Below, one piece after another: positions 10,700 through 55,995 of a DNA stretch of 64,000 nucleotides (the stretch's first letter is position 1; every line of letters begins with the position of its first letter). The stretch comes from Octopus sinensis. Its lineage: Eukaryota. The DNA is taken from contig NC_043001.1 of NCBI RefSeq assembly GCF_006345805.1, positions 46,252,001 to 46,316,000 on the forward strand, read 5' to 3'. The notes under the pieces are model-generated. The model saw only the letters and a program-made list of their open reading frames with translations. It searched no databases and was not told where the DNA came from. The position numbers and the translations under genes are program-made.

Positions 10700-10792
10700 C
10701 TATCGAGATGGAAAGCTGCGATTTCGGCATTGTGGCGTTCGAAGTCAACAAAGTAGAAATGGTTCGGTAAGGTCTCCTTGTCGCGTGGGAAT
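10700..10792 (-). CDS. FAM20C: FAM20C coding exon 4 ([31 protein letters not shown]); absent from the ORF track
   Basis: Acceptor tttttcag|A, donor GATAG|gtgag, 93 nt, phase 2 to 2. Confidence 0.96.
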
Positions 10793-11042: not shown

Positions 11043-11227
11043 TGTGTGTGTGTGTGTGAAATTAATATATACAGCCGTGCGCAATGTGTTACCAAAAAGG
11101 AAAACTACAATTGTCACTAAATGTGACTAAGAGTGTTGGAACATCTACATTGCTAGAAATAAGAGCTAACAAGCTCTAATGTTGTAGTTAAAGCACATAA
11201 TTATATACATATATAATGATAGGGACT

Positions 11228-11325
11228 GTAATCGCCCGAAAACACCAGTCGAGAATTCCCTATACTCACAGTTTCGACTATTTCTGTAGCCTCATCAGCA
11301 AAGGCCGCTCGATTCGGCTGATTAC
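11228..11325 (-). ncRNA. Putative type I hammerhead ribozyme in FAM20C intron 3, sense strand
   Basis: Minus strand reads CTGATGA-GGCTA-cagaaa-TAGTC-GAAA-CTGTGAG-TA. It has the full core, a 5-bp stem II, a short stem III, a GUA cleavage triplet and an extended stem I with internal loops. Confidence 0.65.
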
Positions 11326-13074
11326 AAACGTAATTCTATATCAGTATAGCTGTATTTACCATGATAATCTATGGTTGATTTAGCGAAAGTTACAACAATG
11401 CGAGGAAACGCATTGTGACCAGCGGTGTATAACAGCATCGATAATCTTGTTGACACAATGATATGTCTGTGTATATACATAAATTTGATTCTACTTTCCG
11501 TATTATGTCCCCTCATTTGTTATTCTTAAGATTGCTTTAATAACCCTAATTATAACAGATGAGGGGATACAATACGGAAAGTAGAGTCAAAATACACAGA
11601 CATAGCACAGTATCAACAAGATTACCGATGCTGTTATACACCGCTGGTCACAATACGCTTCCTCGCATTCATTTAGTTTCGAATGATGTCACCCTACTAG
11701 CTAGGCGGGAAGGCCAACATTCTCCCTAAACCGAACGCGAGTCCGGCGATGGGTTATCCATTTACAGCTGAGTGGACTGGAGTAACGCGAAATGAAGTGT
11801 TTTAGCTGAAGAACACAACGCGCCGACCGGTCTGGAAACTATAACGGGTAGTTAGAGAATCACTTTCGTGTACGTACAGTAACCTCTTTTCCTCGTAACA
11901 AATGTATGAAGTAGGGCGCGAAGTACAAAAGTGTATCATAGTTACGTCAGCCTGCCAGAATGTGATTGTCTCAAATTACAATCCGCGAAAGAATCTGAAC
12001 TCAGTATCAGTTTTTACGGAGACTTATTTATTATAACGTAAGAGGCAACAGCTAATCACTTAGTTTCTACTTAAATGGTACCTATTTACTGTTATATTAT
12101 ACCTATTTACTGTTATGCTGTACTCTGTTGGAGTTACACGCTTAGATGTATCTATTTACAACCAGATATGTGTGTTTACAATCAGATTGACTTATCTATT
12201 GAAAGGTAGTAATTTATTGTTTGGTGGACATCGAGTGTTAAGAGGAACTTATCTACACGGAAGCAGACTCAGCTGTTGCGAGCTACCTATAAACAGCAAG
12301 GCAGTTTCTGTTGTTGAGCAGTACCTATTTACAGCTCAGTGGACTCAGATATTAAGAGAAATATCTATTAAAAAATAGGTGATCTTAGGTGTTGAGAACT
12401 AACCATTTATATTTAGGCGGTCTTCTCTGATGAGGAATGCTTGAGAGGTACCTACGTACAACTAGGTGGATTCAGCAGTTAAGTAGTGCTTATTTACAGT
12501 TGATGGAAGATGCCTACACACAGCTTAGTGAACTCACCAATTGTTCTTTTATAATCTTTTACTAGGAATAAAGGCGGTACTTATGATGTCCGCAGGGCTC
12601 CCGCGACCAGTGGGAGAGAGGTTGGCAGGTGTCCTCTTACGAGGGATATGCCCCAAATATTTACAACAGAATGCTTTCTGCTAAAGGCACCCAAGGTGCC
12701 AGGTGGTGGTATTAATCTGAGTAGTATTTAAACACGGAATGCAAAGAAACATGCTGCAGAACCAGTGACTGGATACAAAATCTAGTGGGTATCTAATGCA
12801 TTTCCTCAGACAGCCTTGCCGTTGTTTCGTTTCCTTTGACCAAACCGAAAACCGTAATTTAATCTCAATATTTAAAGAATGAAGAAAAAAAGACCACGAC
12901 TTGCATGAATAAATAGATAGATAGAAAGATAGATACAAACATACATACATACACACATACATGCATGCATACACATACATACATACATACATACACACAT
13001 ACATACATACATACATACATACATACATACATACATACATACATACATACATACATACATCAACTCAAATTCAG

Positions 13075-13375
13075 CTGGCATCCCGTTGATTACGACAACG
13101 AGTGTTCCAGTCAACGGAACAGTCTGCTCGTGAAATTAACGTCCACGTGGCTGAGCTCTCCACAGACATGCATACCCTTAACGTAGTTCTCAAGGAAATT
13201 CAGTGTGACAGAGGATGTGACAAGGCTAACACTTTGAAATACAGGTACTTATTCATTTTTGTCAGCTGAGAGTGGACTGGAGCAGCGGGAAAAAATAAAG
13301 TTTCTTGCTCAAGAGCAGAACGCATCGCCGGGAATCGAACTCACGATTTTAAAACTTAGTGGTTAGGGTATTCGG
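13075..13375 (-). mobile_element. tRNA-derived SINE, family C in my labelling
   Basis: Reverse-complement match to the copies at 51516-51833 and 54722-55050. Confidence 0.75.
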
Positions 13376-13804
13376 TTCAGGATCCTACATACATATATAT
13401 GTGTGGGTGTGAAATTTCGCAGATGGAAACTGCGTGGAAGCCTGTCATTGGGGCTATTTTTGCACTTGGTTTTAACACTCTTACTCGTTCCTCGGGTCTC
13501 TGCTGCGAGCATTCGAGCCAGGTTTCGGATGGAGGAAAACTTCTGCCCTCCAACATGCTCGTCTCAGACACCCTCACAATTGTCGAGGGTGCTGTTGCCC
13601 TTCCTCCTCTGACAAAGCCATTAAGAAACAAACAGCAAAAACAAATCACCTTGCGGCCCCTCAAACTCACACCCTACATCAAAATGTCGTTTACACCATA
13701 GTTTTAAACGAAGCAGATAATGAAAAACAAAAAGTAAGGTAAATGAATAAAAATACACGAAACTACCTTTTATCTCGTATTTCAAACAAAATTGGTTTTC
13801 TAAC

Positions 13805-13846
<42 letters not shown>

Positions 13847-15026
13847 GTGTGTGTATGTATGCATGCATGTATGTATGTTTGTATGTATGAATGCATGTAT
13901 GCATGTATGCATATATATATATAAATATGTGAGCATGTGTGTATGTATACATGTGTGTGTGAGACTGTATATTATATAATGTATACATTTATAGATATGC
14001 ATACACGCATGTATGTGTGTGTATATATATATTTGTAGATAGGTATACACACATACATATGTATGTATGGTGCCTCTGCGTGTGCATATGTGTGTATTTG
14101 TGTGTGAGAGAGAGAGAGAGAAGGAAAAAGTAAAAGTATAGGGAGAGCTTCCAAACATTATGAAAGGATGTTTCTACATGCCCCTTCCACCTTCAGACAT
14201 TCACACATGTCAGTTATCTCATAAGTTCAAAGGAAAAATAATATTACCCCTGTCCACTTCCCGCCGTAAACGAGAAATTAGTAAGTTACATGTTGAAAGA
14301 AAAATAACTTGCATCCCACCACAAAGTCTAAGATCATCCACCTAAGTGTAGGAAACAGAAAATACTGTTTTTAAACTCAATCCAACAATGCGCTTATAAC
14401 ATCATATGTTTTTCAGCAAATGCACTCAGTCTTAAGTTTCTGTTAATCAATCAACGAATGCGCTTATTATGTCGAAAGTTTTTCGCCAAATATATATATA
14501 GTTATCGGTTTTTTTCTTCTTTTTTTTTAACTTAAGCCTTAAACGGAGGACATCAACTGATGTTTCATTAGAGAACAGCGGACATCATCAATTGATGTTT
14601 CAAAATTTTACATGACTATGGCCACCATCAAAGGAAAGTGAATATATGATGGCACTTTTTTGAAAATGAGGTTGTACAATTTTCCTGTGCAAGAGACTAA
14701 CAATTATTATAGTTTTTGAACTTATTTAGATTGAAAATGAATATAAAAATTGCCTTTAACAAAAAATAAAAAGTATGTGACATCAAAAATATTTACATTA
14801 TTAAATTTGGTTCTAACTCAAAATATAATTTTAATTACTTGTGCAGCGCAGTTGCACATCAGTAAATAGGTTTTTACACTATTTGCATACCTCAGAGCAG
14901 CGATTTGAATTCGTTTCGAGGGTTACAAGACTATACAGTACTGAAGAGTTGAAATAACAGCGAAATATCGATATCTAGTGTTCTCGTTCGCCTACGAGAC
15001 AATTCGTTTCATTTATTTTGGCGGTA

Positions 15027-15249
15027 TACATGGCTGTGCTGAAAAGTTCTTAGCTTTGGGTAAAAGAAAATACAGAAGGATCAGCTAATTATGATTTTAT
15101 TTAACATATTACCCTCTCAGATTCACAAACTTTTTGCAGCAGTCCTTCAGTTTTTCTAAGCCCCGTGAAAGAACTTGGAAAGTTGGGCCTCCAACCAGGC
15201 CTTTCGCGACACCTTTAAATCCAGAAACTTTTGAGCAGTTCCCCCGTTA
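15027..15249. mobile_element. Mariner-derived MITE
   Basis: Ends tacatggctgtgctgaaaagttct... and ...agaaacttttgagcagttcccccgtta form an imperfect inverted repeat around non-coding sequence. Confidence 0.55.
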
Positions 15250-15549
15250 CAAGTGTTAATTTTTAATACTCTATGTCTTAAAGAGACATTCTCTGACAAA
15301 ATAACGCAGCGTGAAAACATTTGAACAAAACACATACATTATGTCAAATCAGTGATATATTTTTGTTTTTTGTCCCTTTGACACGTACATTCTGTAACCA
15401 TTCCCCTTCGTTTAAGAGTTAAGCTACAACACAGATACACCCACACAAACACACACACAGTACACTAATTATGTCGTAAGTTTGTTTATTCAGTCCACCA
15501 AATACTATCTAAATCTATCACAGACACGCGCGCGCGTGAGCGCACAACC

Positions 15550-16570
15550 ACTAATGAGCCTTTCTACTTGTAGGTGCAGGGCCTGAAATTTTTTGCCGGG
15601 AGATAGTCAACTACATCAATTCCATTGCTCAACTAGTACTTATTTTATCGGCGCCGAATGAGTGAAAGTGCTAAGTCGTCGAACTTAGCGGAACTCGAAC
15701 TTAGAAAGAATAGCCGGAAGAAATGTCGTTAAGCATTTTCCCAGTATGCTAACGATTCTGCCAGCGTGTGACCTTAACACATACATACACGTAAACGGTG
15801 GCGGAGGCAAACACAGACACAAAAACACACATATGACGGGCTTCTTTCAGTCTCCGTCTACCTAATCCACTCACAAGGTTTTGATCGGCCCAAGGCTATA
15901 GTAGAAGACACTTACTCAAATTGTCACGCAGTGCGACTGAACCCTGAACTATGTGGTTGGGAAGCAAGCTTCTTACCACACAACCATGCCTACACCTAAT
16001 ATGTCATAGGTAGTTTTCATTTTTTATCTCAACCATGCAAATACACTAGCTTTGTCATAACTTTTTCTCTCAATCCACCAAATTAATTATAAGTAGTAGT
16101 TAATTACTGTCCCGAATACACTTTTTTTATTCTGTTTATTTATTATTTTCATTTTTTTATCTTTTACTTGTTTCAGTTATTGACATAATAACTGAGGTCA
16201 TGCTGAGGTAAACTGCTTTGAAGGGTTTAGTCTGGACAGATCGAACCCAGTACGGCCGTTTTTTAAAGTCTGGTAGTTTATTCTAGTTCTCACTTTGGCC
16301 AAAGCGCTATATCATGGTGACATAAACAAACCAACAACGGTGTTGTGAAGCGGTGGTGGTGGGGTGACAAACACAGACACACTCATGAACACACATATAC
16401 ATACATATACGGGACGGGCTGCCACGCTGTTTGCATCTATCGAATTCACTCACAAGGCTTTGGTCAGCCCTAGGTTGTATTAGAAAACACTTGCCCAAGG
16501 AAACACGCAGTGGGATTCAACCGACGACGACGTAGTTGCAAAGCGAGCTTCTTAACCATGCAGCCATTCT
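15550..16570 (-). mobile_element. Cluster of SINE family A (about 15550-15780) and family B (about 15790-15995 and 16160-16570) copies
   Basis: Similarity to fuller copies at 63560-63782 (A) and 55211-55610 (B). Confidence 0.7.
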
Positions 16571-21407: not shown

Positions 21408-22249
21408 GAGGGGTTTGGTTCACTGATGATCTAAACGAATAGGTACGATGCATTGGTCATCCGTTAAGTTCCAAATTCACAGCTGAGGCTGGAGCTAGGG
21501 ATCCATAGTAGGCTTCCAAGTCAGCAGGTATATATCAAAGGAAAATTAAACAAAACCAAGGCAGGACGAGCGTCTCAGATCATTGAGAATATTTAGAATA
21601 AGGTGAATCAAAGATGTAGAAGAAGTAATTAATATCTTACAGCTGTTTCTGGCATATATCAGGTGATGGGTCAACACCTCCATACACAGGGTATAAGCTT
21701 GTAAGATAAATGGTTCACATAGGAGTACCGCGTGTACCGTCTCTCTCACACGGTATGTGTGAGGACCATTTTTCTAACAAGCTAACCACTTGATCTATTC
21801 TTTCAATCTGAATGCAACATTCAAAATACTATCTGGATTTACCTGGGATTATACTTAAGGAGCTATACCTTCACGAAAGTACAGACTAACCTCCATATCC
21901 TCAAGAACAAGATGAACAATGAACTTTATTCTCCTGTCTTTATTCTTCTATCTACTGTTTTATTATTACATACTGTGAATTCCCTGTATGGAACTTTCCT
22001 GCAGATACACCTTGTCTCTGACGACGGAATACTCAGTGTATGGAGACCGATAGAATAAGTACTAGTCCTGGGGTCAATTTGTTCGATTAAAGACGGTCCT
22101 ACAACATTGCCGCAGACAAATGACTGAAACAAGTAAAAGAATAAAATATATATGTATGTATATATGTATATTCGATGTACATATACTTGTATGTATGTAT
22201 GTATGTATGTATGTATGTATGTATGTATGTATGTATGTATGTATGTATG

Positions 22250-22557
22250 TATGTATGTCACAGTGACTGACCAGGCTCTCAGATGTTGCTACACACCGCT
22301 GGTCACAATGCACTTCGCATTGTTTTAGCCTTCAAATGACGCCACCCCGCTGGCTAAGCGAGCACCCAACAGAAAAAAGAGTGAGAGAAAGTTGTGGTGA
22401 AAGAGTACAGCAGGGATCGCCACCACCCCCTGCCGGAGCCTCGTGGAGCTTTAGGTGTTTTTCGCCCAATAAACACTCACAACGCCCGGTCTGGGAATCG
22501 AAACCGCGATCCTACGACCACAAGTCCGCTGCCCTAACCACTGGGCCATTGCACCTT
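22250..22557 (-). mobile_element. tRNA-derived SINE family D (tRNA-Arg-like head)
   Basis: Minus strand ggcccagtggttagggcagcggacttgtggtcgtaggatcgcggtttcgattccc. A second copy lies at 32266-32560 on the + strand. Confidence 0.8.
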
Positions 22558-26955: not shown

Positions 26956-28184
26956 TACACAGACATGCAGGAAGTAAATATACACCTTTAATTTTCAAAA
27001 TCTTTTATTTAATACGCAAAGCGAACAGTTGAAACGTAATCGATAGGTAGGACTACATACTTTAGTATTTAGTTGACATTCCCTAAGCAGTTTTTAATTC
27101 AGAATTTTTTTTGGCATTAAACTGATGAGCTTTGTGTTTGTCTCTTGTGGAATTTCTGCCCACTTTTCACGCAACAATCGAAACAATTCATCTTTAGATT
27201 TAGGTTTCTGTCGAGTTTTTCGTATAGCTCTATCTAGTATGCTCCAAAGATTTTCAATTGGGTTCATGTCAGTAGATTGGCTCGGCCAAGGAAGCTTTTT
27301 GATCTCATTTTCAGTCAGCCATTGTTGATTCCTTTTCGCTGTGTGGCATGGAGCCTCATCTTCCATGAATAAAAACTCATTTTTCGCTGTTATCGTGCGT
27401 ATACATCGGAAGTAGTACTTGCTTAAGTATTTCGATGTATTTTTCAGAGCGACTCAGAATGACCATTGCTGGTGACAGCTCCCTATACCATTACACAGAT
27501 ACCGCCATGTTTCACAGTTAGTTGGAGTCGTTTCATATAAAATTCTTGATTGTGAAGCCGCCAGATCCAAACATGTCCACTGTCTGAAAATAATGCAAAT
27601 CTGGATTCATCTGAGAAAATCACTCAATCCCAGAATGAACTGGATTTTTCTAACATCTCTTTAGCCCATTTCTTTCTTTTCATGATATTAATTGGTTGAA
27701 GGAGAGGTTTTCTTCTAGCGGCTCGTCCATAATACCCAAGCTTATGCAGATATGTAAGACACGTTCTTGGATTAACTTACAACTGTTTTGCAATGTCAGA
27801 AGCCTTCGAACGGGGTTCGTTTTCCACAATTCTCTTCAAACAGCGAAGCTTCCGTTCCCAGGGTCCAGGTCGGCCGGGACGAGAATCTGTTGATTTTTTT
27901 CCTTGGCTTTTGAATTGCACTATAATTCTATTAACAGTAGCAAGAGGAATTTGAAAATTTTTGGCAATTTTTTGCTGACTAAGACCAGCCTCAAATTGCC
28001 CAACAATACGATCTCATTGAAAATCTGATAGTTCTGCTGAATTTTTTGTGCGTGGCATGGTTACTCTTCGCAAATGTTTAATATAATGACACCTGGAATG
28101 AAAAAGAATAATTACATAGTAAATTCTATACCGCTGAAAACATATTAAGACGCTTAGATCAGAAATTTTGAAAATTAAAGGTGT
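26956..28184 (-). mobile_element. Tc1-like DNA transposon with disrupted DD34E transposase
   Basis: Start MPRTKNSAELSDFQ at 28058. C-terminal ORF 27094-27366 has DEAPCH...WPSQSTDMNPIENLW. Perfect 19-bp inverted repeat at 26982-27000 / 28166-28184. Confidence 0.9.
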
Positions 28185-28913
28185 CAACCTAAAAGCAGAA
28201 ATACATACGTCACTAAAGTGTACAAGGGCACTAATCATCACCAGTATTCCTAGAAATAACAGTCGAAACAACTCAGTAACCACTAAAAGCACTCTCTTAA
28301 TAAGCTGAAAGGGAGACAAGCTCCCTATGGTCGGAGAACACCGATGATTTCGCATTCTAATGCTCATCAGTTGCTCTCACTGCGCCTAGGGTTAAACTCA
28401 TCTCGTCTTGTCAGCTTATAAGATCTACGTTGAAATCATATGCTGATTTCATATACGGTAGTGTGAGAATTATAAATAATATGGGGTGGCTAATTCGCAA
28501 TTTTACAACCTAAAGGCAGAAGTAAATACGTCACTAAAGTGAACAAGAGCAATAAACAGTACCAGTATTGCTAGAAATAACAGTCAAAACAACTCAGTAA
28601 CTACAAAAAGCACCATCTTATGTATGTATGTATGTATGTAAGTATGTATGTATGTAAGTATGTATGTATGTATGTATGTATGTATGTATGTATGTATGTA
28701 TGTATGTATATCTAAATTATATGAAAAGTTGACAGTTTTCTCTAAGTTTTGCCCTTGGCTTTTCATGACAGCCAAAGGAGAAAATCTCTCTGCGCGCACG
28801 CGCACCGTGTGTGCGTTTATATATATATAGTTTTTATATATGTATAAGTATATTATATATCATACATATATATATATATATTATATATATATATACACAT
28901 ATATATACATATA

Positions 28914-36072: not shown

Positions 36073-36385
36073 GTTGCATAGCTCAGTGGTTAGGGCGTCG
36101 GGTTCACAATCTTGAGGTAGTGAGTTCGATTCCCGGACCGGGCTGTGTGTTGTGTTCATGAACAAGACACTATTTCACGTTGTTCCAGTTCACTTAGCTG
36201 TAGAGATGAGTTGTAACATCATTGGTGCCAAGCTGTATCAGCCTTTGCCTTTCCCTTGAATAACATCGGTGAAGAGGGGGGGGGCTGGTATGCATGGATA
36301 ACTACAGATCTTCTATAAACAACCTTGCCTGGAGGGTAATTTTCTAGGTGCAATCCCATGGTCATTCATGACCTAAAGGGGGTCG
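36073..36385 (+). mobile_element. tRNA-derived SINE, family E in my labelling
   Basis: A/B-box head tagctcagtggttagggcg...gagttcgattcccgg followed by a central domain similar to family C. Confidence 0.7.
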
Positions 36386-36913: not shown

Positions 36914-38863
36914 CATGTTTGACTTTTGCTTTATATTTGTACAAGTTGACTCCAAGTCTCACCCGGAGACCTCAAAAGACAACAGGTTGGAAGTTCACAT
37001 TGTTGTTATGCCTAGTGTGCCATATATTTGGTTGTTTTTTGTGTTGTACTGGTGGATGTCTAAAAAAAATGTTTGTTTTAAACCTTGAGATTACATAGAA
37101 AGTATTTTGCGTAGGATATGAGCAGTTCCCATGAGCACTATCTTTTGAATTTCTGCCATTTTTGGGGTTTCCTGGTATCTGAGTTAGGTAGCTATCAGCC
37201 CCTTTTGCTATCATTCCCAGGGCACCTATGACAACAGGTACTGTTTTAGTCTTCATGTTCCACATTTTGCTGATTTCTATTTCAAGATCTTTATATTTGC
37301 TCAGTTTTTGGTAGGTCTTGACAGATATGTTTATATCGATTGGGACAGTAATATCAATGAGGAGGCATGTTCTTTGTTTGAAGTCTTTCAATATGATGTC
37401 TGGCCTATTTGCATCTATCTTTCTATCAGTTTGAATGGTGAAGTTCCAGAGGAGTGAGATGTGGTCATTTTCAAGCACTGGGGGTGGTTTGTGTTCCCAC
37501 CATTTTTTTTTCATGGGGCAAATCCAGGTTTTTGCAGATTACCCAGTGAATATATTGTGCAGCTCTATCGTGCCTGTTGAGATACTCTGTAGGCGCTAGA
37601 AGACTGCACTTGGAGACCACATGATCAATGGTTTCATTTTATTGCTGGCATACACGACGCGTTGGACTGCTGCTGATCTTTAATATGTTGGTAGTTTCTT
37701 GTTGGTAGGCATTGATCTTGAGCTGCTATGATAAACCCCTCTGTTTCAGATTTTAAGCCAGAGGCCATTAGCCATTGATGGGTCAGGGCTTTGTCAACAT
37801 CTGCATTATTCGCTCTCTTTGGGTATTTGCCATAGAGAGGTTTTTCTTGCCATTTATCATTCAGAATATCTAAGGCCGCAGATTTAGCACGGGTTTTCAT
37901 GCGCTTAGCTTTTTCTGTGCCTGTTTCTTGTATGTCTATCTCTAATTCCGAAATTTGTTGTATTCGGAATTCACTTAGATATTCCTTTGCCTGTTTTGTT
38001 ACTGAGTATGATGCTTTCTTGTTTTCATGTTTTGAGACAAGTTTTAACATCCAGTCCTCAGAGTTTTTCAGGTAGGTGTCTAGGCTAATTGTAGCAATCT
38101 TCATTGTTATTGCCAGTTGTAAAAGTCCACGGCCTCCCTCTTTTCTTGGCAGATAAAGTCGTTCTGTATCTGCCTTAGGATGGTGCATTCTATGCATTGT
38201 CAACAGTTTTCGTATTTTTCTGTCAAGATTACATATTTCAGTAATTGACCAGTTAACGATATTGAAACTGTAAGTCACGACTGGTATGGCTAATGCATTG
38301 ATCGCTTCGATCCTGTTTCTCGCATTCAGCTCTGTCTTGAGTATTGCTCTTACTCTGCAATAACATTCTCTCCTGATCCTTTCCTTCATCTCTGAATGCC
38401 TTATTCCGTCTCCTTCAATTACCCCTAGATACTTGTAGTTCTCCGCTGGGTCTAATTCTTTTATGACATTCTCCTGGTCAAGGTTAACGTTAGATGTTTC
38501 TGTCATTTTTCCTTTGATAAAGGTAGCTTTTGCACACTTATCGAGGCCAAATTGCATTCTGATGTCATCACTGAATTGTTTGACAATCGCTAGTAAGCCC
38601 TTGAGTTGTTGGTCATTTTTTGCAAAGAGCTTTAAATCATCCATGTAAATGAGATGATTTATATTTTTATCAAACATTTTATATCCGTACTGCGCGTCAT
38701 TGAGCAGTTTTGAGAGAGGTATTAAGGCTAAACAGAAGAGGAGTGGTGAAAGTGAGTCACCCTGGAAAATGCCACATGAAATTTTTACATCACCAGCATT
38801 TAGAGATTCATTGTCACTGTTCAAAGTTAGTGTGGTTCTCCATGATCTCATACTTGCAGAAAA
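36914..38863 (-). mobile_element. 5'-truncated R4/Dong-clade non-LTR retrotransposon (RT, CCHC knuckle, PD-(D/E)xK restriction-like endonuclease), frameshifted
   Basis: ORF 37634-38851 has GIFQGDSLSPLLF and YMDDLKL. It is followed by ETIDHVVSKC and by ORF 36972-37514 with NRPDII...LIDITVP...KLSKYKDL. Flanked on both sides by (TAA)n. Confidence 0.92.
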
Positions 38864-44235: not shown

Positions 44236-44814
44236 AAGGACGTAAACATTCATTTTAACAATATATTCTTTAAATTCTTATTGCTAAGCGTTACTTCCTT
44301 ATTCTCTTTCTGACACGAAATTTCGTGGAATTTCACCCCATAACTTTTCTTCTACTAATTTTTGTTCAGTACGACTAATGACTCTGAATTCCTCATACGT
44401 TTTTCTATAATTTAAGCCTAAGAAAAGCATATTTTTATTTTAAAATTAAAAAGTTTACGTTCATTGAATGTGAATAGGTGCCTTACAGCCCCCTTGAGGT
44501 CGTAGATATTTTGTCTACTGAACCAAATCTCAAACTATTTATGTCACAGTGTAGCTGAGGATGTTTCCTCTTTAAAACTATTAACAACTATTTAGTTGAG
44601 AACTGAATTAGTGGTGAAGTTTGGAGCTGCCGCGATTGACGAAATGGTGGACTTAAGAATATATTCAACCACTACTGTGGCTGAATGATACATAAATACA
44701 GAAAACAAGAGAGAGAGAGAGAGAGAGAAACTGAGAGGCAGACATGTATGTGTACGTTTGTGTCGCAGAGACTTGCAAGAAAGGCTTTGTGATAAATATT
44801 AAGGGTGTACTTAC

Positions 44815-45713
44815 TGGTCATAACTGCGGAAAATCGACTTGAGACTTGGCATCCTCACGTTTCGGCGCTGTGCCGGTACGACATCGATTTTATCCCCGAA
44901 GTACTTTTCCATGATTCGATGGAGTTCCTTGATATATACTGCGTTAAGACTTGAATTCACACACTTCTGTAAAATGTCAGCGTTTAACAAAGATGTCCTC
45001 TTGCTGTTACGCCAGCGTAAACTCTTATCCATTCGGCGCGGGTTGTTGCCTCCACCTTCCAACTCGTGACGTAGCGGAATGTCGTCATCCTGTTCGGGCG
45101 TATCGTTTTGGTCGTGGGCTGCCTTCTCCCGCTCCAAGCTTATGTTGTTATTGTTGTTGTTGTTGTTCTCATTGTTGTCATCTTCATCGGCGGCACCACC
45201 ACCACCACCACCACCACCACCACCGCCGCCACCACCACCACCAGCAGCAGCAATAGCATCAGCAGCAACGGCCTTACCGCCATTGCCAGCGGCACCTACG
45301 CCACTATCAGCCCCTCCTCCACCTCCTACTCCACCACCACCACCACCACCACCAACAGCAGCGTTATGGCCACCACCGCCACCGATACCAACACCACCAC
45401 CACCTCCTCCTCCTCCTCCGCCGCCGCTACTGGCGTTACTTTTGTTGAGGTTCTTTCGGAGCAAGTGCAAATGAGCTCGGTTTGCTCCGGCTCTGGTGTT
45501 AGAGTAATCTATGCGATAGGGGTCGCTGACGGCCTGGCCCTCGCGAATTAGGTAGTATGCAGCCTCTTTGTCGCCAGCTGCGTCCATATCTGTCCCCAAG
45601 TAATCAGTGGAAGACATGGAGAAAAGTCGACTGACTAGGGCTGTATTTAACAGCACGACAGTTAAGACGAACGATAACGCAACCAATGTTAGGAGCCGTT
45701 GGAGGGTCTTCAT
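44815..45713 (-). CDS. FAM20C: FAM20C coding exon 1: signal peptide/type II anchor plus low-complexity Gly/Ala/Asn stem
   Basis: ORF MKTLQRLLTLVALSFVLTVVLLNTALVS... has a hydrophobic N-terminus. It ends GAC CA|gtaagt (donor 44814-44809, phase 2); CA+A joins exon 2 in frame as Gln. Confidence 0.85.
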
Positions 45714-51515: not shown

Positions 51516-51833
51516 GCGCGTGGCTTAGTGCTTAGGGTATTCGGCTCACAATCGTAAGGTCGCATGTTCAATTTCCGGCGTTGCGTTGTGTTCCTTGAGC
51601 AGGTCTCTTTATTTCACGTTGCTCCCGTCCACTCAGGTGGAAAAAAATGAGTAGTACCTGTATTTCAAAAGGCCAGCCTTGTCATACCCCGTCTCATCCC
51701 GAATATCCCTGAGAACTATGTTAAGGGTACGCGTGTCTGTGGAGTGCTCAGCCACTTGAGCGTTAATTTCACGAGCAGGGTGTTCCGTTGATCGGATCAA
51801 CTCGAACCTTCGTCGTCGTAACAGACGGAGTGT
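51516..51833 (+). mobile_element. Full-length tRNA-derived SINE family C
   Basis: A/B-box head gcgcgtggcttagtgcttagggtattcggctcacaatcgtaaggtcgcatgttcaatttcc. Near-duplicated ttatgtctc(g/t)acata flanks (51494 and 51841) may be a target-site duplication. Confidence 0.85.
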
Positions 51834-54721: not shown

Positions 54722-55050
54722 AGACGCGTGGTTTAATGGTTAGGGTATTCGGCTCACGATTGTAAGGTCGTGAGTTCGATTTCCGGCGGTGCGTTGTGTC
54801 CTTGAGCAAGACACTTTAGTTCACGTTGCTTGAATTCACTCAGCTGATAAAAATGAGTAGTACCTGTAATTCAAAAGGGCCAGCCTTGTCACATTCTGCG
54901 TCACGCTGAATCTGCCTGAAAGCAACGTTAAGGGTACGCGTGCCTGTGGAGTACTCAGCCACTTGCAGGTTAATTTCAGGAGCAGGTTGTTCCGTTGATT
55001 GGATCAACTCGAATCATCGGATTATCGTCGTCGTAACTGACGGAATGCCA
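54722..55050 (+). mobile_element. Full-length SINE family C
   Basis: Matches 51516-51833. Confidence 0.85.
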
Positions 55051-55816: not shown

Positions 55817-55850
<34 letters not shown>

Positions 55851-55895
55851 TGTATGTATGTATGTATGTATGTATGTATGTATATATGTATGTAT

Positions 55896-55995
55896 NNNNN
55901 NNNNNNNNNNNNNNNNNNNNNNNNNNNNNNNNNNNNNNNNNNNNNNNNNNNNNNNNNNNNNNNNNNNNNNNNNNNNNNNNNNNNNNNNNNNNNNN
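55896..55995. other. Assembly gap (100 N) within or next to a (TATG)n tract
   Basis: Run of exactly 100 n; the true distance is unknown. Confidence 0.99.

What the first reader, a model, noticed from the sequence alone, without database searches (positions are those of the whole stretch)
11228..11325. Apparently intact type I hammerhead ribozyme in the sense strand of FAM20C intron 3
Seen on the minus (pre-mRNA) strand: CUGAUGA (11298-11292); stem II GGCUA/UAGUC with loop CAGAAA; GAAA (11275-11272); stem III ACU/AGU with a GUG loop; cleavage triplet GUA (11265-11263). Stem I has 5 proximal pairs (three G-U), an internal loop, then UCGAG/CUCGA, and further CCGAA/UUCGG and GUAAUC/GAUUAC helices. 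Known: hammerheads occur in Penelope-like elements and retrozymes, and conserved intronic hammerheads exist in amniotes; loop II-stem I contacts boost activity. Inference: co-transcriptional cleavage between 11263 and 11262, about 470 nt upstream of the exon 4 acceptor, could affect splicing or intron turnover. The wobble-rich proximal stem I may make it slow or dead.
Basis: partly seen in the sequence, partly recalled or inferred. Interest (0 to 1): 0.7.

Follow-up and report, generated by a model that had tools for sequence, protein, structure and literature searches.

The report
Weak hammerhead ribozyme motif, likely transposon relic
The intron really does contain a complete hammerhead self-cleaving-RNA motif on the gene's sense strand, but it looks like a weakly folding leftover of a mobile element, a kind already known from many animal genomes, and not a new regulator of FAM20C.

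Summary
The predicted cut (11263|11262) lies 470 nt upstream of a FAM20 exon (10792-10700).

- **Above chance for this window.** My descriptor finds it as the only match, with about 2e-5 expected per window and about one per 2.5 Gb.
- **Independent model.** A covariance model built only from four experimentally validated animal type I hammerheads scores it 20.9 bits (E about 1e-3).
- **Rfam.** No hammerhead model reports it, even at E<=10 on 126 nt.

The motif is atypical and weak. Proximal helix I has about 0 kcal/mol of stability, against -6 to -7 in validated ribozymes. Helix III is 3 bp with a non-palindromic triloop, so neither the monomer nor the dimer route looks good.

The same model finds a second, more canonical hammerhead in the same intron on the opposite strand (14935-14981, 23.4 bits) and a degenerate one at 28377-28335. 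A 120-nt unit follows both the candidate and that degenerate copy, where it forms a 321-nt partial tandem.

Most likely this is a solo, decaying copy of a retrozyme- or Penelope-type hammerhead repeat. An effect on splicing is unlikely, because RNA polymerase II covers 470 nt in roughly 7-14 s. Conservation and activity could not be tested.

The parts
11228..11325 (-). Whole 98-nt hairpin: type I hammerhead-like motif with an extended helix I
   Evidence: Read directly. The predicted lowest-energy fold keeps the three distal helices and helix II.
11292..11298 (-). Core box C3-A9 (CUGAUGA)
11276..11291 (-). Helix II GGCUA/UAGUC (G10.1-C11.1 present, one G-U) with loop 2 CAGAAA
   Evidence: Loop 2 resembles the validated loops CAAAAA (axolotl Ax330) and AGAAA (coral).
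11272..11275 (-). Core G12 A13 A14 A15.1 (GAAA)
11264..11272 (-). Helix III ACU/AGU with triloop GUG. It is not palindromic. As a lone hairpin it costs +2.1 kcal/mol.
11262..11263 (-). Predicted scissile bond: A17 (11263) | U1.1 (11262), triplet GUA
   Evidence: A GUA site is attested in the validated axolotl Ax353 ribozyme.
11299..11303 (-). Proximal helix I, 5' strand CUUUG
   Evidence: Pairs with 11262-11258 (UAGGG): 5 bp, three G-U, duplex energy +0.1 kcal/mol.
11258..11262 (-). Proximal helix I, 3' strand UAGGG
11308..11325 (-). Distal helix I, 5' strands: GUAAUC (11325-11320), CCGAA (11317-11313), UCGAG (11312-11308). Followed by internal-loop CGGC (11307-11304).
   Evidence: Pair probabilities 0.6-1.0.
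11228..11257 (-). Distal helix I, 3' strands: internal-loop AAUU (11257-11254), CUCGA (11253-11249), UUCGG (11240-11236), GAUUAC (11233-11228).
11084..11204 (-). About 120-nt 'A unit' directly 3' of the hairpin. It is shared with the locus at 28.2-28.6 kb.
   Evidence: Smith-Waterman z 8-9. nhmmer finds exactly three copies in the window.
10700..10792 (-). Downstream FAM20 exon (context only). Its acceptor is 470 nt from the cut site.
14935..14981 (+). Second, more canonical type I hammerhead-like motif in the same intron, antisense to the gene. Helix I is 6 bp with one G.G, helix II is GUUG/CAGC with loop AAAUAA, and helix III is the palindrome AUAUCGAUAU. Predicted cut 14975|14976.
   Evidence: R1 23.4 bits, E 2e-4. 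Rfam HH9 14.9 bits, E 0.24.
28335..28377 (-). Degenerate hammerhead-like tip (CUGAUGA-GCAU-UAGA-AUGC-GAAA) of a very stable hairpin. Unpaired bases at the junctions with helix I break the motif.
   Evidence: R1 12.4 bits, E 0.34. Hairpin -56 kcal/mol, z -6.8.
28181..28622 (-). 321-nt partial tandem: A unit (28622-28501), hairpin segment, A unit (28299-28181).
   Evidence: 115-nt direct repeat, 87% identical, spacing 321. nhmmer.

Best explanation
This is a genuine hammerhead-derived sequence: a solo copy of a hammerhead-bearing, non-autonomous retroelement of the retrozyme / Penelope-like-element kind. It sits in a transposon-rich, roughly 8-kb FAM20C intron, in sense orientation.

**Shown.** The catalytic core and the type I three-helix topology are intact.

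**Inferred.**
- If the motif folds, it would cut the pre-mRNA between A11263 and U11262 by the usual 2'-OH transesterification.
- It probably folds poorly. Proximal helix I is five pairs with three wobbles and no net stability. Helix III is a 3-bp triloop hairpin, and it lacks the palindrome that lets animal type I hammerheads work as dimers. No second copy lies nearby to pair with.
- A rod-like alternative fold sequesters C3-U4 and the cleavage site.
- It is therefore most likely slow or inactive, and has no effect on FAM20C splicing.
For: - **Core and helices.** Complete, and the only descriptor match in the window. Chance expectation is about 2e-5 per window.
- **Independent model.** A covariance model from four experimentally validated animal type I hammerheads (sequences from Suppl. 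Table 2 of PMC7229834) gives 20.9 bits, E about 1e-3. Noise in the window stays at or below 12.4 bits.
- **Second motif.** The same model finds a more canonical hammerhead 3.7 kb away (23.4 bits), so the region is enriched in such motifs. Aligned to the model, the two form 22 of 24 possible pairs, and 5 of 12 pairs differ on both sides.
- **Loops.** Loop 2 (CAGAAA) and the helix I internal loop (CGGC) resemble validated coral and axolotl ribozymes.
- **Repeat context.** A 120-nt unit follows the hairpin. It recurs only at 28.2-28.6 kb, where it flanks a degenerate hammerhead-like hairpin in a 321-nt partial tandem. That size lies within the 170-400 nt reported for animal retrozymes (PMC7229834).
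- **No coding partner.** There is no RT or endonuclease domain in 11330-16300, so the copy is non-autonomous or solo. Most such motifs are single, truncated copies (PMC4209133).
- **Weakness.** Helix I +0.1 kcal/mol against -5.9 to -6.8; helix III +2.1; helix III self-duplex -2.1 against -4.6 to -13.4; hammerhead fold -18.6 against a lowest-energy fold of -27.6.
Against: - No Rfam hammerhead model reports it, even at E<=10 on 126 nt.
- My model has only four seed sequences and rough E-values. At 20.9 bits, tens of chance matches per 2.5-Gb genome would be expected from the E-value alone.
- No second copy of this ribozyme hairpin exists in the window or in any searchable collection.
- The hairpin segment is not detectably homologous to that of the 28-kb locus (z 0.5), so the link between hairpin and A unit rests on two loci.
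- The locus is neither a tandem nor next to a Penelope-like ORF.
- Nearest-neighbour energies ignore tertiary contacts. Validated hammerheads also show gaps of 2.9-12.5 kcal/mol to their lowest-energy fold. 'Slow or dead' is therefore an inference, not a measurement.
Confidence: 0.6

Rival explanations
1. It is a catalytically competent monomeric hammerhead. The long closed helix I (21 bp in four segments) clamps the weak proximal pairs, loop 2 contacts the internal loop, and the RNA cleaves at a measurable rate. It acts only as part of the mobile element's own RNA processing, or neutrally in the intron, with no host role.
For: The core is intact, G10.1-C11.1 and C15.2-G16.2 are present, and a GUA site occurs in the validated axolotl Ax353 ribozyme. 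The distal helices have high pair probability. Loop 2 resembles validated loops. The mussel retrozyme ribozyme lacks the canonical loop contacts yet cleaves at about 0.1 per min (PMC7229834).
Against: Proximal helix I has no net stability and helix III is unstable. Helices I and II are 5 and 5 bp instead of the canonical 6 and 4 (PMC4209133). A competing fold is 9 kcal/mol lower. There is no Rfam hit.
Confidence: 0.15
2. It is a chance look-alike. An imperfect hairpin from some repeat happens to carry CUGAUGA and GAAA at the right spacing, and it never was a ribozyme.
For: There is no Rfam hit. The hairpin is not unusually stable (z -1.36). About one such core match per genome is expected by chance. 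At 28370-28348 the same boxes sit at the tip of a plain, very stable hairpin where CUGAUGA simply pairs with UCAUCGG. No family copies were found.
Against: The expectation per window is about 2e-5. Two independent strong matches to the validated-hammerhead model in 64 kb (E 2e-4 and 1e-3) are very unlikely together. Helix register is specific in the slide control. Hammerheads are known to be abundant in invertebrate genomes, including molluscs (PMC7229834, PMC4209133).
Confidence: 0.18
3. It is a domesticated intronic ribozyme. Co-transcriptional cleavage 470 nt upstream of the acceptor tunes FAM20C splicing or intron turnover, in the manner of the amniote HH9/HH10 hammerheads or the CPEB3 ribozyme.
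For: It lies on the sense strand, close to the acceptor. Precedents exist for conserved intronic ribozymes (PMC6155905; PMC10919898).
Against: At 2-4 kb per min the polymerase reaches the acceptor in about 7-14 s, so only a very fast ribozyme could compete, and slow ones leave splicing unaffected (PMC10919898, PMC2995048). The helices are weak. The setting is rich in transposons, with a sibling motif on the antisense strand. There are no conservation data. In Xenopus, retrozyme copies are depleted from introns, which suggests they are selected against there.
Confidence: 0.05

Closest known systems
Canonical type I hammerheads of animal non-LTR retrozymes (coral Amil224, mussel Mg353, axolotl Ax353/Ax330; Cervera & de la Pena 2020, PMC7229834)
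   Same: Type I topology and an identical core. Short helix III. Helix I interrupted by an internal loop and then closed by a distal stem. A-rich loop 2 of 5-6 nt (CAGAAA here; AGAAA and CAAAAA there). GUA site as in Ax353. The associated repeat unit, about 321 nt at the sister locus, lies within the 170-400 nt range. GC content is low.
   Different: Here there is a single copy, not a tandem array. Helices I and II are 5 and 5 bp instead of 6 and 4. Helix I is wobble-rich with no net stability. Helix III is not palindromic, so the dimer route is closed. No circular RNA or expression data are available.
Minimal hammerheads in the flanking repeats of Penelope-like elements (Cervera & de la Pena 2014, PMC4209133)
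   Same: They are mostly found as dispersed single motifs from truncated elements. [quoted passage not shown] Their activity in vitro is low. Microsatellites lie beside both loci here, and (TA)n is a reported target of such elements (PMC8557442).
   Different: Minimal hammerheads lack helix III or have a palindromic one, often have 7-8 bp in helix II, and carry an extra base between A9 and 10.1. None of these is seen here. No RT or GIY-YIG ORF lies nearby.
Amniote intronic hammerheads HH9 and HH10 (RECK, CTCL, DTNB; Rfam RF02275, RF02277)
   Same: Type I hammerhead on the sense strand of an intron of a protein-coding gene, thought to derive from retroelement hammerheads (PMC6155905).
   Different: Those are ultraconserved, have canonical 6/4-bp helices and loop contacts, and pass the Rfam thresholds. 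This one gives no Rfam hit, and its conservation is unknown.
CPEB3 HDV-like intronic ribozyme
   Different: It is a different ribozyme class. Its cut is about 10 kb from the next exon, so a half-life of about 2 min is matched to polymerase transit. Here the distance is 470 nt.

Membership tests
Hammerhead ribozyme, type I | Invariant core: C3 U4 G5 A6 N7 G8 A9, G12 A13 A14, A15.1-U16.1 pair, H17 not G | tested here: met
   CUGAUGA, GAAA, A-U closing pair and A17 are all present.
Hammerhead ribozyme, type I | Three helices around the core, with helix I open and helices II and III capped; G10.1-C11.1 pair | tested here: met
   Helices of 5, 5 and 3 bp, with G-C at 10.1-11.1. Eleven of the 12 model pairs form.
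Hammerhead ribozyme, type I | Score at or above the curated Rfam gathering threshold (clan CL00010 models) | tested here: not met
   No hammerhead hit at gathering score, nor at E<=10 on 801 nt or 126 nt. The neighbouring motif at 14935 reaches only 14.9 bits against a threshold of 52.
Hammerhead ribozyme, type I | Significant match to a covariance model of experimentally validated animal type I hammerheads | tested here: met
   R1, built without the candidate, gives 20.9 bits and E about 1e-3 in 128 kb. The E-value is rough and the model has only four seeds.
Hammerhead ribozyme, type I | Canonical animal architecture: helix I 6 bp and helix II 4 bp, with loop 1-loop 2 tertiary contacts | tested here: inconclusive
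   Helices are 5 and 5 bp. Loop 2 CAGAAA and internal loop CGGC resemble validated examples, but the contacts themselves cannot be computed here.
Hammerhead ribozyme, type I | Covariation of the helices across family copies or orthologues | not testable with these tools
   No copy of this hairpin exists in the window or the collections. Only a comparison with the unrelated motif at 14935 was possible.
Hammerhead ribozyme, type I | Site-specific self-cleavage giving 2',3'-cyclic phosphate and 5'-OH ends | not testable with these tools
   This needs a wet-lab assay.
Animal non-LTR retrozyme | Head-to-tail tandem repeats of 170-400 bp, each with a type I hammerhead | tested here: not met
   There is a single copy at 11.2 kb. 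A 321-nt partial tandem (1.4 units) exists only at the sister locus, whose hammerhead is degenerate.
Animal non-LTR retrozyme | Short helix III capped by a palindromic loop, which allows a dimeric ribozyme | tested here: not met
   ACUGUGAGU is not palindromic. Its self-duplex is -2.1 kcal/mol, against -4.6 to -13.4 in validated ribozymes.
Animal non-LTR retrozyme | Expression as circular RNA of monomer size | not testable with these tools
   No transcriptome data are available here.
Penelope-like element flanking repeat (pLTR) | Hammerhead within direct repeats that flank an RT plus GIY-YIG ORF | tested here: not met
   No Pfam domain at E<=0.1 in the six-frame translation of 11330-16300. The downstream side is the FAM20 exon.
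Domesticated intronic hammerhead (HH9/HH10-like) | Conservation at the orthologous intron position across species | not testable with these tools
   No cephalopod genome is searchable here. The only related contig (L001) aligns over an exon only.

The most novel reading that the evidence does not exclude
The motif is a conserved, domesticated sense-strand ribozyme of octopod FAM20C. It would be held in shape by its unusually long closed helix I, and its cleavage just upstream of the acceptor would modulate splicing or intron fate. That would make it an invertebrate counterpart of the amniote intronic hammerheads.
Probability: 0.04. Interest if true: 0.65.

Novelty: new member of a known kind. 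Interest (0 to 1): 0.25.

Why it matters
If the best explanation holds, it matters little. Type I hammerheads derived from retrozymes and Penelope-like elements are abundant in invertebrate genomes, including molluscs, and solo copies inside introns are common.

There is modest value in three points:
- I found no paper describing hammerheads in cephalopods.
- One 64-kb window holds two or three such motifs that Rfam thresholds miss. Curated models therefore probably under-count them in this lineage.
- The 321-nt partial tandem looks like the more-than-unit-length product expected from a circular RNA template.

Only if the motif proved conserved and fast would it bear on the open question of what intronic ribozymes do.

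Tried and rejected
- **Rfam cmscan.** Run at gathering score on the whole window, and at E<=10 on 801 nt and on 126 nt. No hammerhead hit for the candidate. The sub-threshold plant-miRNA hits at 11397-11669 only reflect a long inverted repeat.
- **Other copies in the window.** A pattern search with 3 mismatches and a sensitive blastn found none for the hairpin.
- **The CUGAUGAGG at 12427-12435 (+)**, flagged as inverted repeat I18. It has no GAAA or helices, so it was rejected.
- **Family copies through proteins.** The 55-aa and 117-aa ORFs overlapping the motifs gave no exact record and no homologue.
- **Orthologous intron through FAM20 exons.** The protein collection holds only exon fragments. 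The closest contig (L001, 1577 nt) matches the exon at 77.5% and no intron sequence.
- **Metagenome scan** for CTGATGAGGCTA-N4-8-TAGTCGAAAC: 0 hits.
- **Homology of the hairpin segment with the 28-kb locus.** Not significant (z 0.5). The arms of the three motifs share a GGUGUUYUC block, but p is 0.06-0.25.
- **Gap between the hammerhead fold and the lowest-energy fold as a discriminator.** Rejected, because validated ribozymes span 2.9-12.5 kcal/mol.
- **Penelope-like ORF nearby.** The first Pfam call failed on stop codons. The rerun with X in place of stops found nothing.

Full report
**1. The observation**

On the minus strand, the stretch 11325-11228 reads GUAAUCAGCCGAAUCGAGCGGCCUUUG-CUGAUGA-GGCUACAGAAAUAGUC-GAAA-CUGUGAGU-A|UAGGGAAUUCUCGACUGGUGUUUUCGGGCGAUUAC.
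- Core and helices: CUGAUGA 11298-11292; helix II GGCUA/UAGUC with loop CAGAAA; GAAA 11275-11272; helix III ACU/AGU with loop GUG; triplet GUA 11265-11263.
- Helix I: a proximal part of five pairs, three of them G-U; then a 4x4 internal loop (CGGC/AAUU); then three distal helices.

The next exon encodes [31 protein letters not shown], a FAM20 kinase motif. It begins at 10792 after a cag acceptor and ends at 10700 before gtgagc. The predicted cut at 11263|11262 is therefore exactly 470 nt upstream.

Other FAM20 exons lie on the same strand at 45713-44811, about 18860-18787 ([23 protein letters not shown]), 9068-8785 (Pfam PF06702 relatives), about 7450 and about 5866. The motif is thus on the sense strand of an intron of about 8 kb. 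I did not verify that it is intron number 3.

**2. Is it more than chance?**

- A type I descriptor requires CUGANGA, a capped helix II, GAAA, a capped helix III closed by A-U, H17, and helix I. It finds this site as the only match in the window at helices >=4/2/4 bp.
- In 57 Mb of first-order Markov sequence, that stringency gave no match.
- In 152 Mb of composition-matched random sequence it gave one match, and stricter settings gave none.
- Scaling by the pairing probability (0.38 per added pair) gives about 2e-5 expected per window for the observed 5/3/5 bp. That is roughly one per 2.5-Gb genome, before counting the 16 further base pairs of distal helix I.

The match is well above chance for this window. 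The core alone would not be compelling at genome scale.

**3. Tests against known hammerheads**

Rfam's curated models do not report the candidate, at gathering score or at E<=10 on 801 nt or 126 nt.

I then built an independent model. It used four type I hammerheads whose self-cleavage was shown experimentally: coral Amil224, mussel Mg353, and axolotl Ax353 and Ax330. Their sequences come from Supplementary Table 2 of PMC7229834. I aligned the cores and built a covariance model with the textbook structure. The candidate was not in the model.

| Site in window | Strand | Bits | E-value |
|---|---|---|---|
| 14935-14981 | + | 23.4 | 2e-4 |
| 11304-11257 (the candidate) | - | 20.9 | 1.1e-3 |
| 28377-28335 | - | 12.4 | 0.34 |
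| everything else | | 12 or less | |

These values were the same with and without speed filters. The E-values are rough, and the model is small. Even so, two strong matches in 64 kb, where about 0.001 is expected, argue that this genome region carries real hammerhead-derived sequences.

Aligned to the model, the two motifs form 22 of 24 possible pairs, and 5 of 12 pairs differ on both sides while staying paired. Sliding the partners drops pairing to 58% or less.

**4. Anatomy compared with validated ribozymes**

The literature describes the canonical animal type I hammerhead as follows: helix I 6 bp, helix II 4 bp, interacting loops, and a helix III of 1-2 bp capped by a small palindromic loop. 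The palindrome lets two copies form an active dimer (PMC4209133).

The motif at 14935 fits this description. It has ACAGUA/UAGUGU with one G.G, GUUG/CAGC with loop AAAUAA, and the perfect palindrome AUAUCGAUAU. Rfam's HH9 model also sees it weakly (14.9 bits, E 0.24).

The candidate deviates in several ways.
- **Helix lengths.** Helices I and II are 5 and 5 bp.
- **Helix I.** The proximal duplex has +0.1 kcal/mol, against -5.9 to -6.8 in the four validated ribozymes.
- **Helix III.** It is a 3-bp triloop hairpin costing +2.1 kcal/mol. Its sequence ACUGUGAGU is not palindromic, with a self-duplex of -2.1 against -4.6 to -13.4.
- **Competing fold.** In the lowest-energy fold, UGCU (including C3 and U4) pairs with AGUA (including the cleavage site), giving a rod 9 kcal/mol more stable than the hammerhead fold (-27.6 against -18.6). 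This gap does not discriminate by itself, because validated ribozymes show 2.9-12.5 kcal/mol.

In its favour:
- Loop 2 (CAGAAA) resembles CAAAAA of axolotl Ax330 and AGAAA of the coral ribozyme.
- The 5' internal loop CGGC resembles the coral's CAGC.
- A GUA site is used by Ax353.
- The distal helices are predicted with high probability and could clamp the weak proximal pairs.

**5. Context**

The intron is a mosaic of repeats.
- Directly upstream on the RNA lies a 273-nt MITE-like inverted repeat (11397-11669), with a relative at 22235-22347.
- A SINE-like unit at 11754-11838 has four further copies.
- Directly downstream of the hairpin lies a 120-nt 'A unit' (11204-11084), followed by a (CA)n(TA)n microsatellite.

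The A unit has exactly two other copies in the window, at 28622-28501 and 28299-28181 (nhmmer; z 8-9). Those two are 87% identical and 321 nt apart. They flank a very stable hairpin (-56 kcal/mol, z -6.8). The tip of that hairpin carries CUGAUGA-GCAU-UAGA-AUGC-GAAA, which is the third hit of the model. That copy is degenerate, with unpaired bases at both junctions with helix I. It starts at a (TATG)n microsatellite.

So an A unit directly follows both of these minus-strand hammerhead-like hairpins. At one locus the arrangement is a 1.4-unit tandem of 321 nt. That lies within the 170-400 nt size range of animal retrozymes. It is also the shape expected from more-than-unit-length reverse transcription of a circular RNA (PMC7229834).

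The hairpin segments of the two loci are not detectably homologous (z 0.5), so this link is suggestive and not proven.

No reverse transcriptase or endonuclease domain is detectable in any frame of 11330-16300. The copies are therefore non-autonomous or solo. This is the usual state of such motifs (PMC4209133). In Xenopus, dispersed retrozyme monomers overlap introns in 42-44% of cases (bioRxiv 10.64898/2026.07.22.740005).

**6. Mechanism and consequence**

If folded, the RNA would cleave itself after A17 (11263) by in-line attack of the 2'-OH, leaving a 2',3'-cyclic phosphate and a 5'-OH. This is established hammerhead chemistry (PMC6155905).

Whether it folds is the open question, and the weak helices I and III argue for slow or no cleavage (inference).

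For the host gene, published work shows that a ribozyme in an intron disturbs splicing only if it cuts fast. Slow hammerheads leave splicing intact through exon tethering (PMC2995048 citing Dye 2006 and Fong 2009; PMC10919898). With 470 nt to the acceptor and 2-4 kb per min for RNA polymerase II, the window is about 7-14 s. That requires rate constants of several per minute, which only the best natural hammerheads reach. An effect on FAM20C splicing is therefore unlikely (inference).

**7. Comparison with what is known, and novelty**

It works like, and is most simply filed with, the type I hammerheads of animal retrozymes and Penelope-like elements.

| Feature tested | Result |
|---|---|
| Invariant core | met |
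| Type I topology | met |
| G10.1-C11.1 pair | met |
| Match to a model of validated ribozymes | met |
| Rfam threshold | not met |
| Tandem arrangement | not met |
| Palindromic helix III | not met |
| Adjacent Penelope-like ORF | not met |
| Covariation, orthologue conservation, cleavage | not testable here |

Full-text searches found no paper describing cephalopod hammerheads. This is at most a first sighting in that lineage of a well-known kind.

**8. What could not be done**

No cephalopod genome is reachable with these tools. Attempts through ORFs, exon homologues and a metagenome pattern scan all failed.

**Verdict**

It is a real hammerhead-derived motif, most likely a weak or dead solo relic of a mobile element (confidence 0.6).
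- A regulatory role is improbable (about 0.05).
- Chance resemblance is not excluded (about 0.18).
- Interest is low to moderate (0.25).

Noticed in passing
window 14935-14981 (+): A second, more canonical type I hammerhead-like motif sits in the same intron, antisense to FAM20C. It reads ACAGUA-CUGAAGA-GUUG-AAAUAA-CAGC-GAAA-UAUCGAUAU-C|UAGUGU, with a palindromic helix III and a predicted cut at 14975|14976. My model scores it 23.4 bits and Rfam HH9 14.9 bits, E 0.24. It is embedded in a roughly 110-nt hairpin.
   Followed up: partly
window 28181-28622 (-): A 321-nt partial tandem: two 120-nt units, 87% identical, flank a very stable hairpin (-56 kcal/mol, z -6.8). The hairpin tip (28377-28335) carries CUGAUGA...GAAA in a degenerate hammerhead arrangement (12.4 bits). 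The array starts at a (TATG)n microsatellite. Its shape is retrozyme-like.
   Followed up: partly
window 11397-11669: A MITE-like nested inverted repeat: outer arms 78 nt at 91% complementarity, inner arms 50 nt at 84%. It has a diverged relative at 22235-22347. It produces sub-threshold Rfam hits to plant miRNA hairpin families (MIR6217, 78.5 bits against a threshold of 110), which are artefacts of the long hairpin.
   Followed up: partly
window 11754-11838, 13249-13339, 36130-36202, 51575-51643, 54783-54851: A short interspersed repeat of about 75-90 nt at 70-79% identity, containing GAGTGGACTGGAG...CGAAA. It is probably a SINE fragment.
   Followed up: no
window 37634-38851 (-) and 27094-27366 (-): A 405-aa ORF with a reverse transcriptase domain (RVT_1, E 1.7e-13), probably a retrotransposon of unknown class, and a DDE_3 transposase fragment (E 3e-9). 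Both lie in upstream introns of the gene.
   Followed up: partly
window 14550-14598 (-): A weak match to the model (10.9 bits, E 0.9) with UUGAUGA in place of CUGAUGA. It lies within a local direct repeat (GGACATCA..TGATGTTTCA) about 350 nt from the motif at 14935. It is probably noise.
   Followed up: no
window 44811-45713 (-): The first coding exon of the FAM20 gene carries long poly-Gly and poly-Asn tracts. No Pfam domain is found in it.
   Followed up: no
window about 55850-55950: A run of 100 N (an assembly gap) lies inside a (TATG/CATA)n microsatellite. It shows as X runs in the ORF translations.
   Followed up: no
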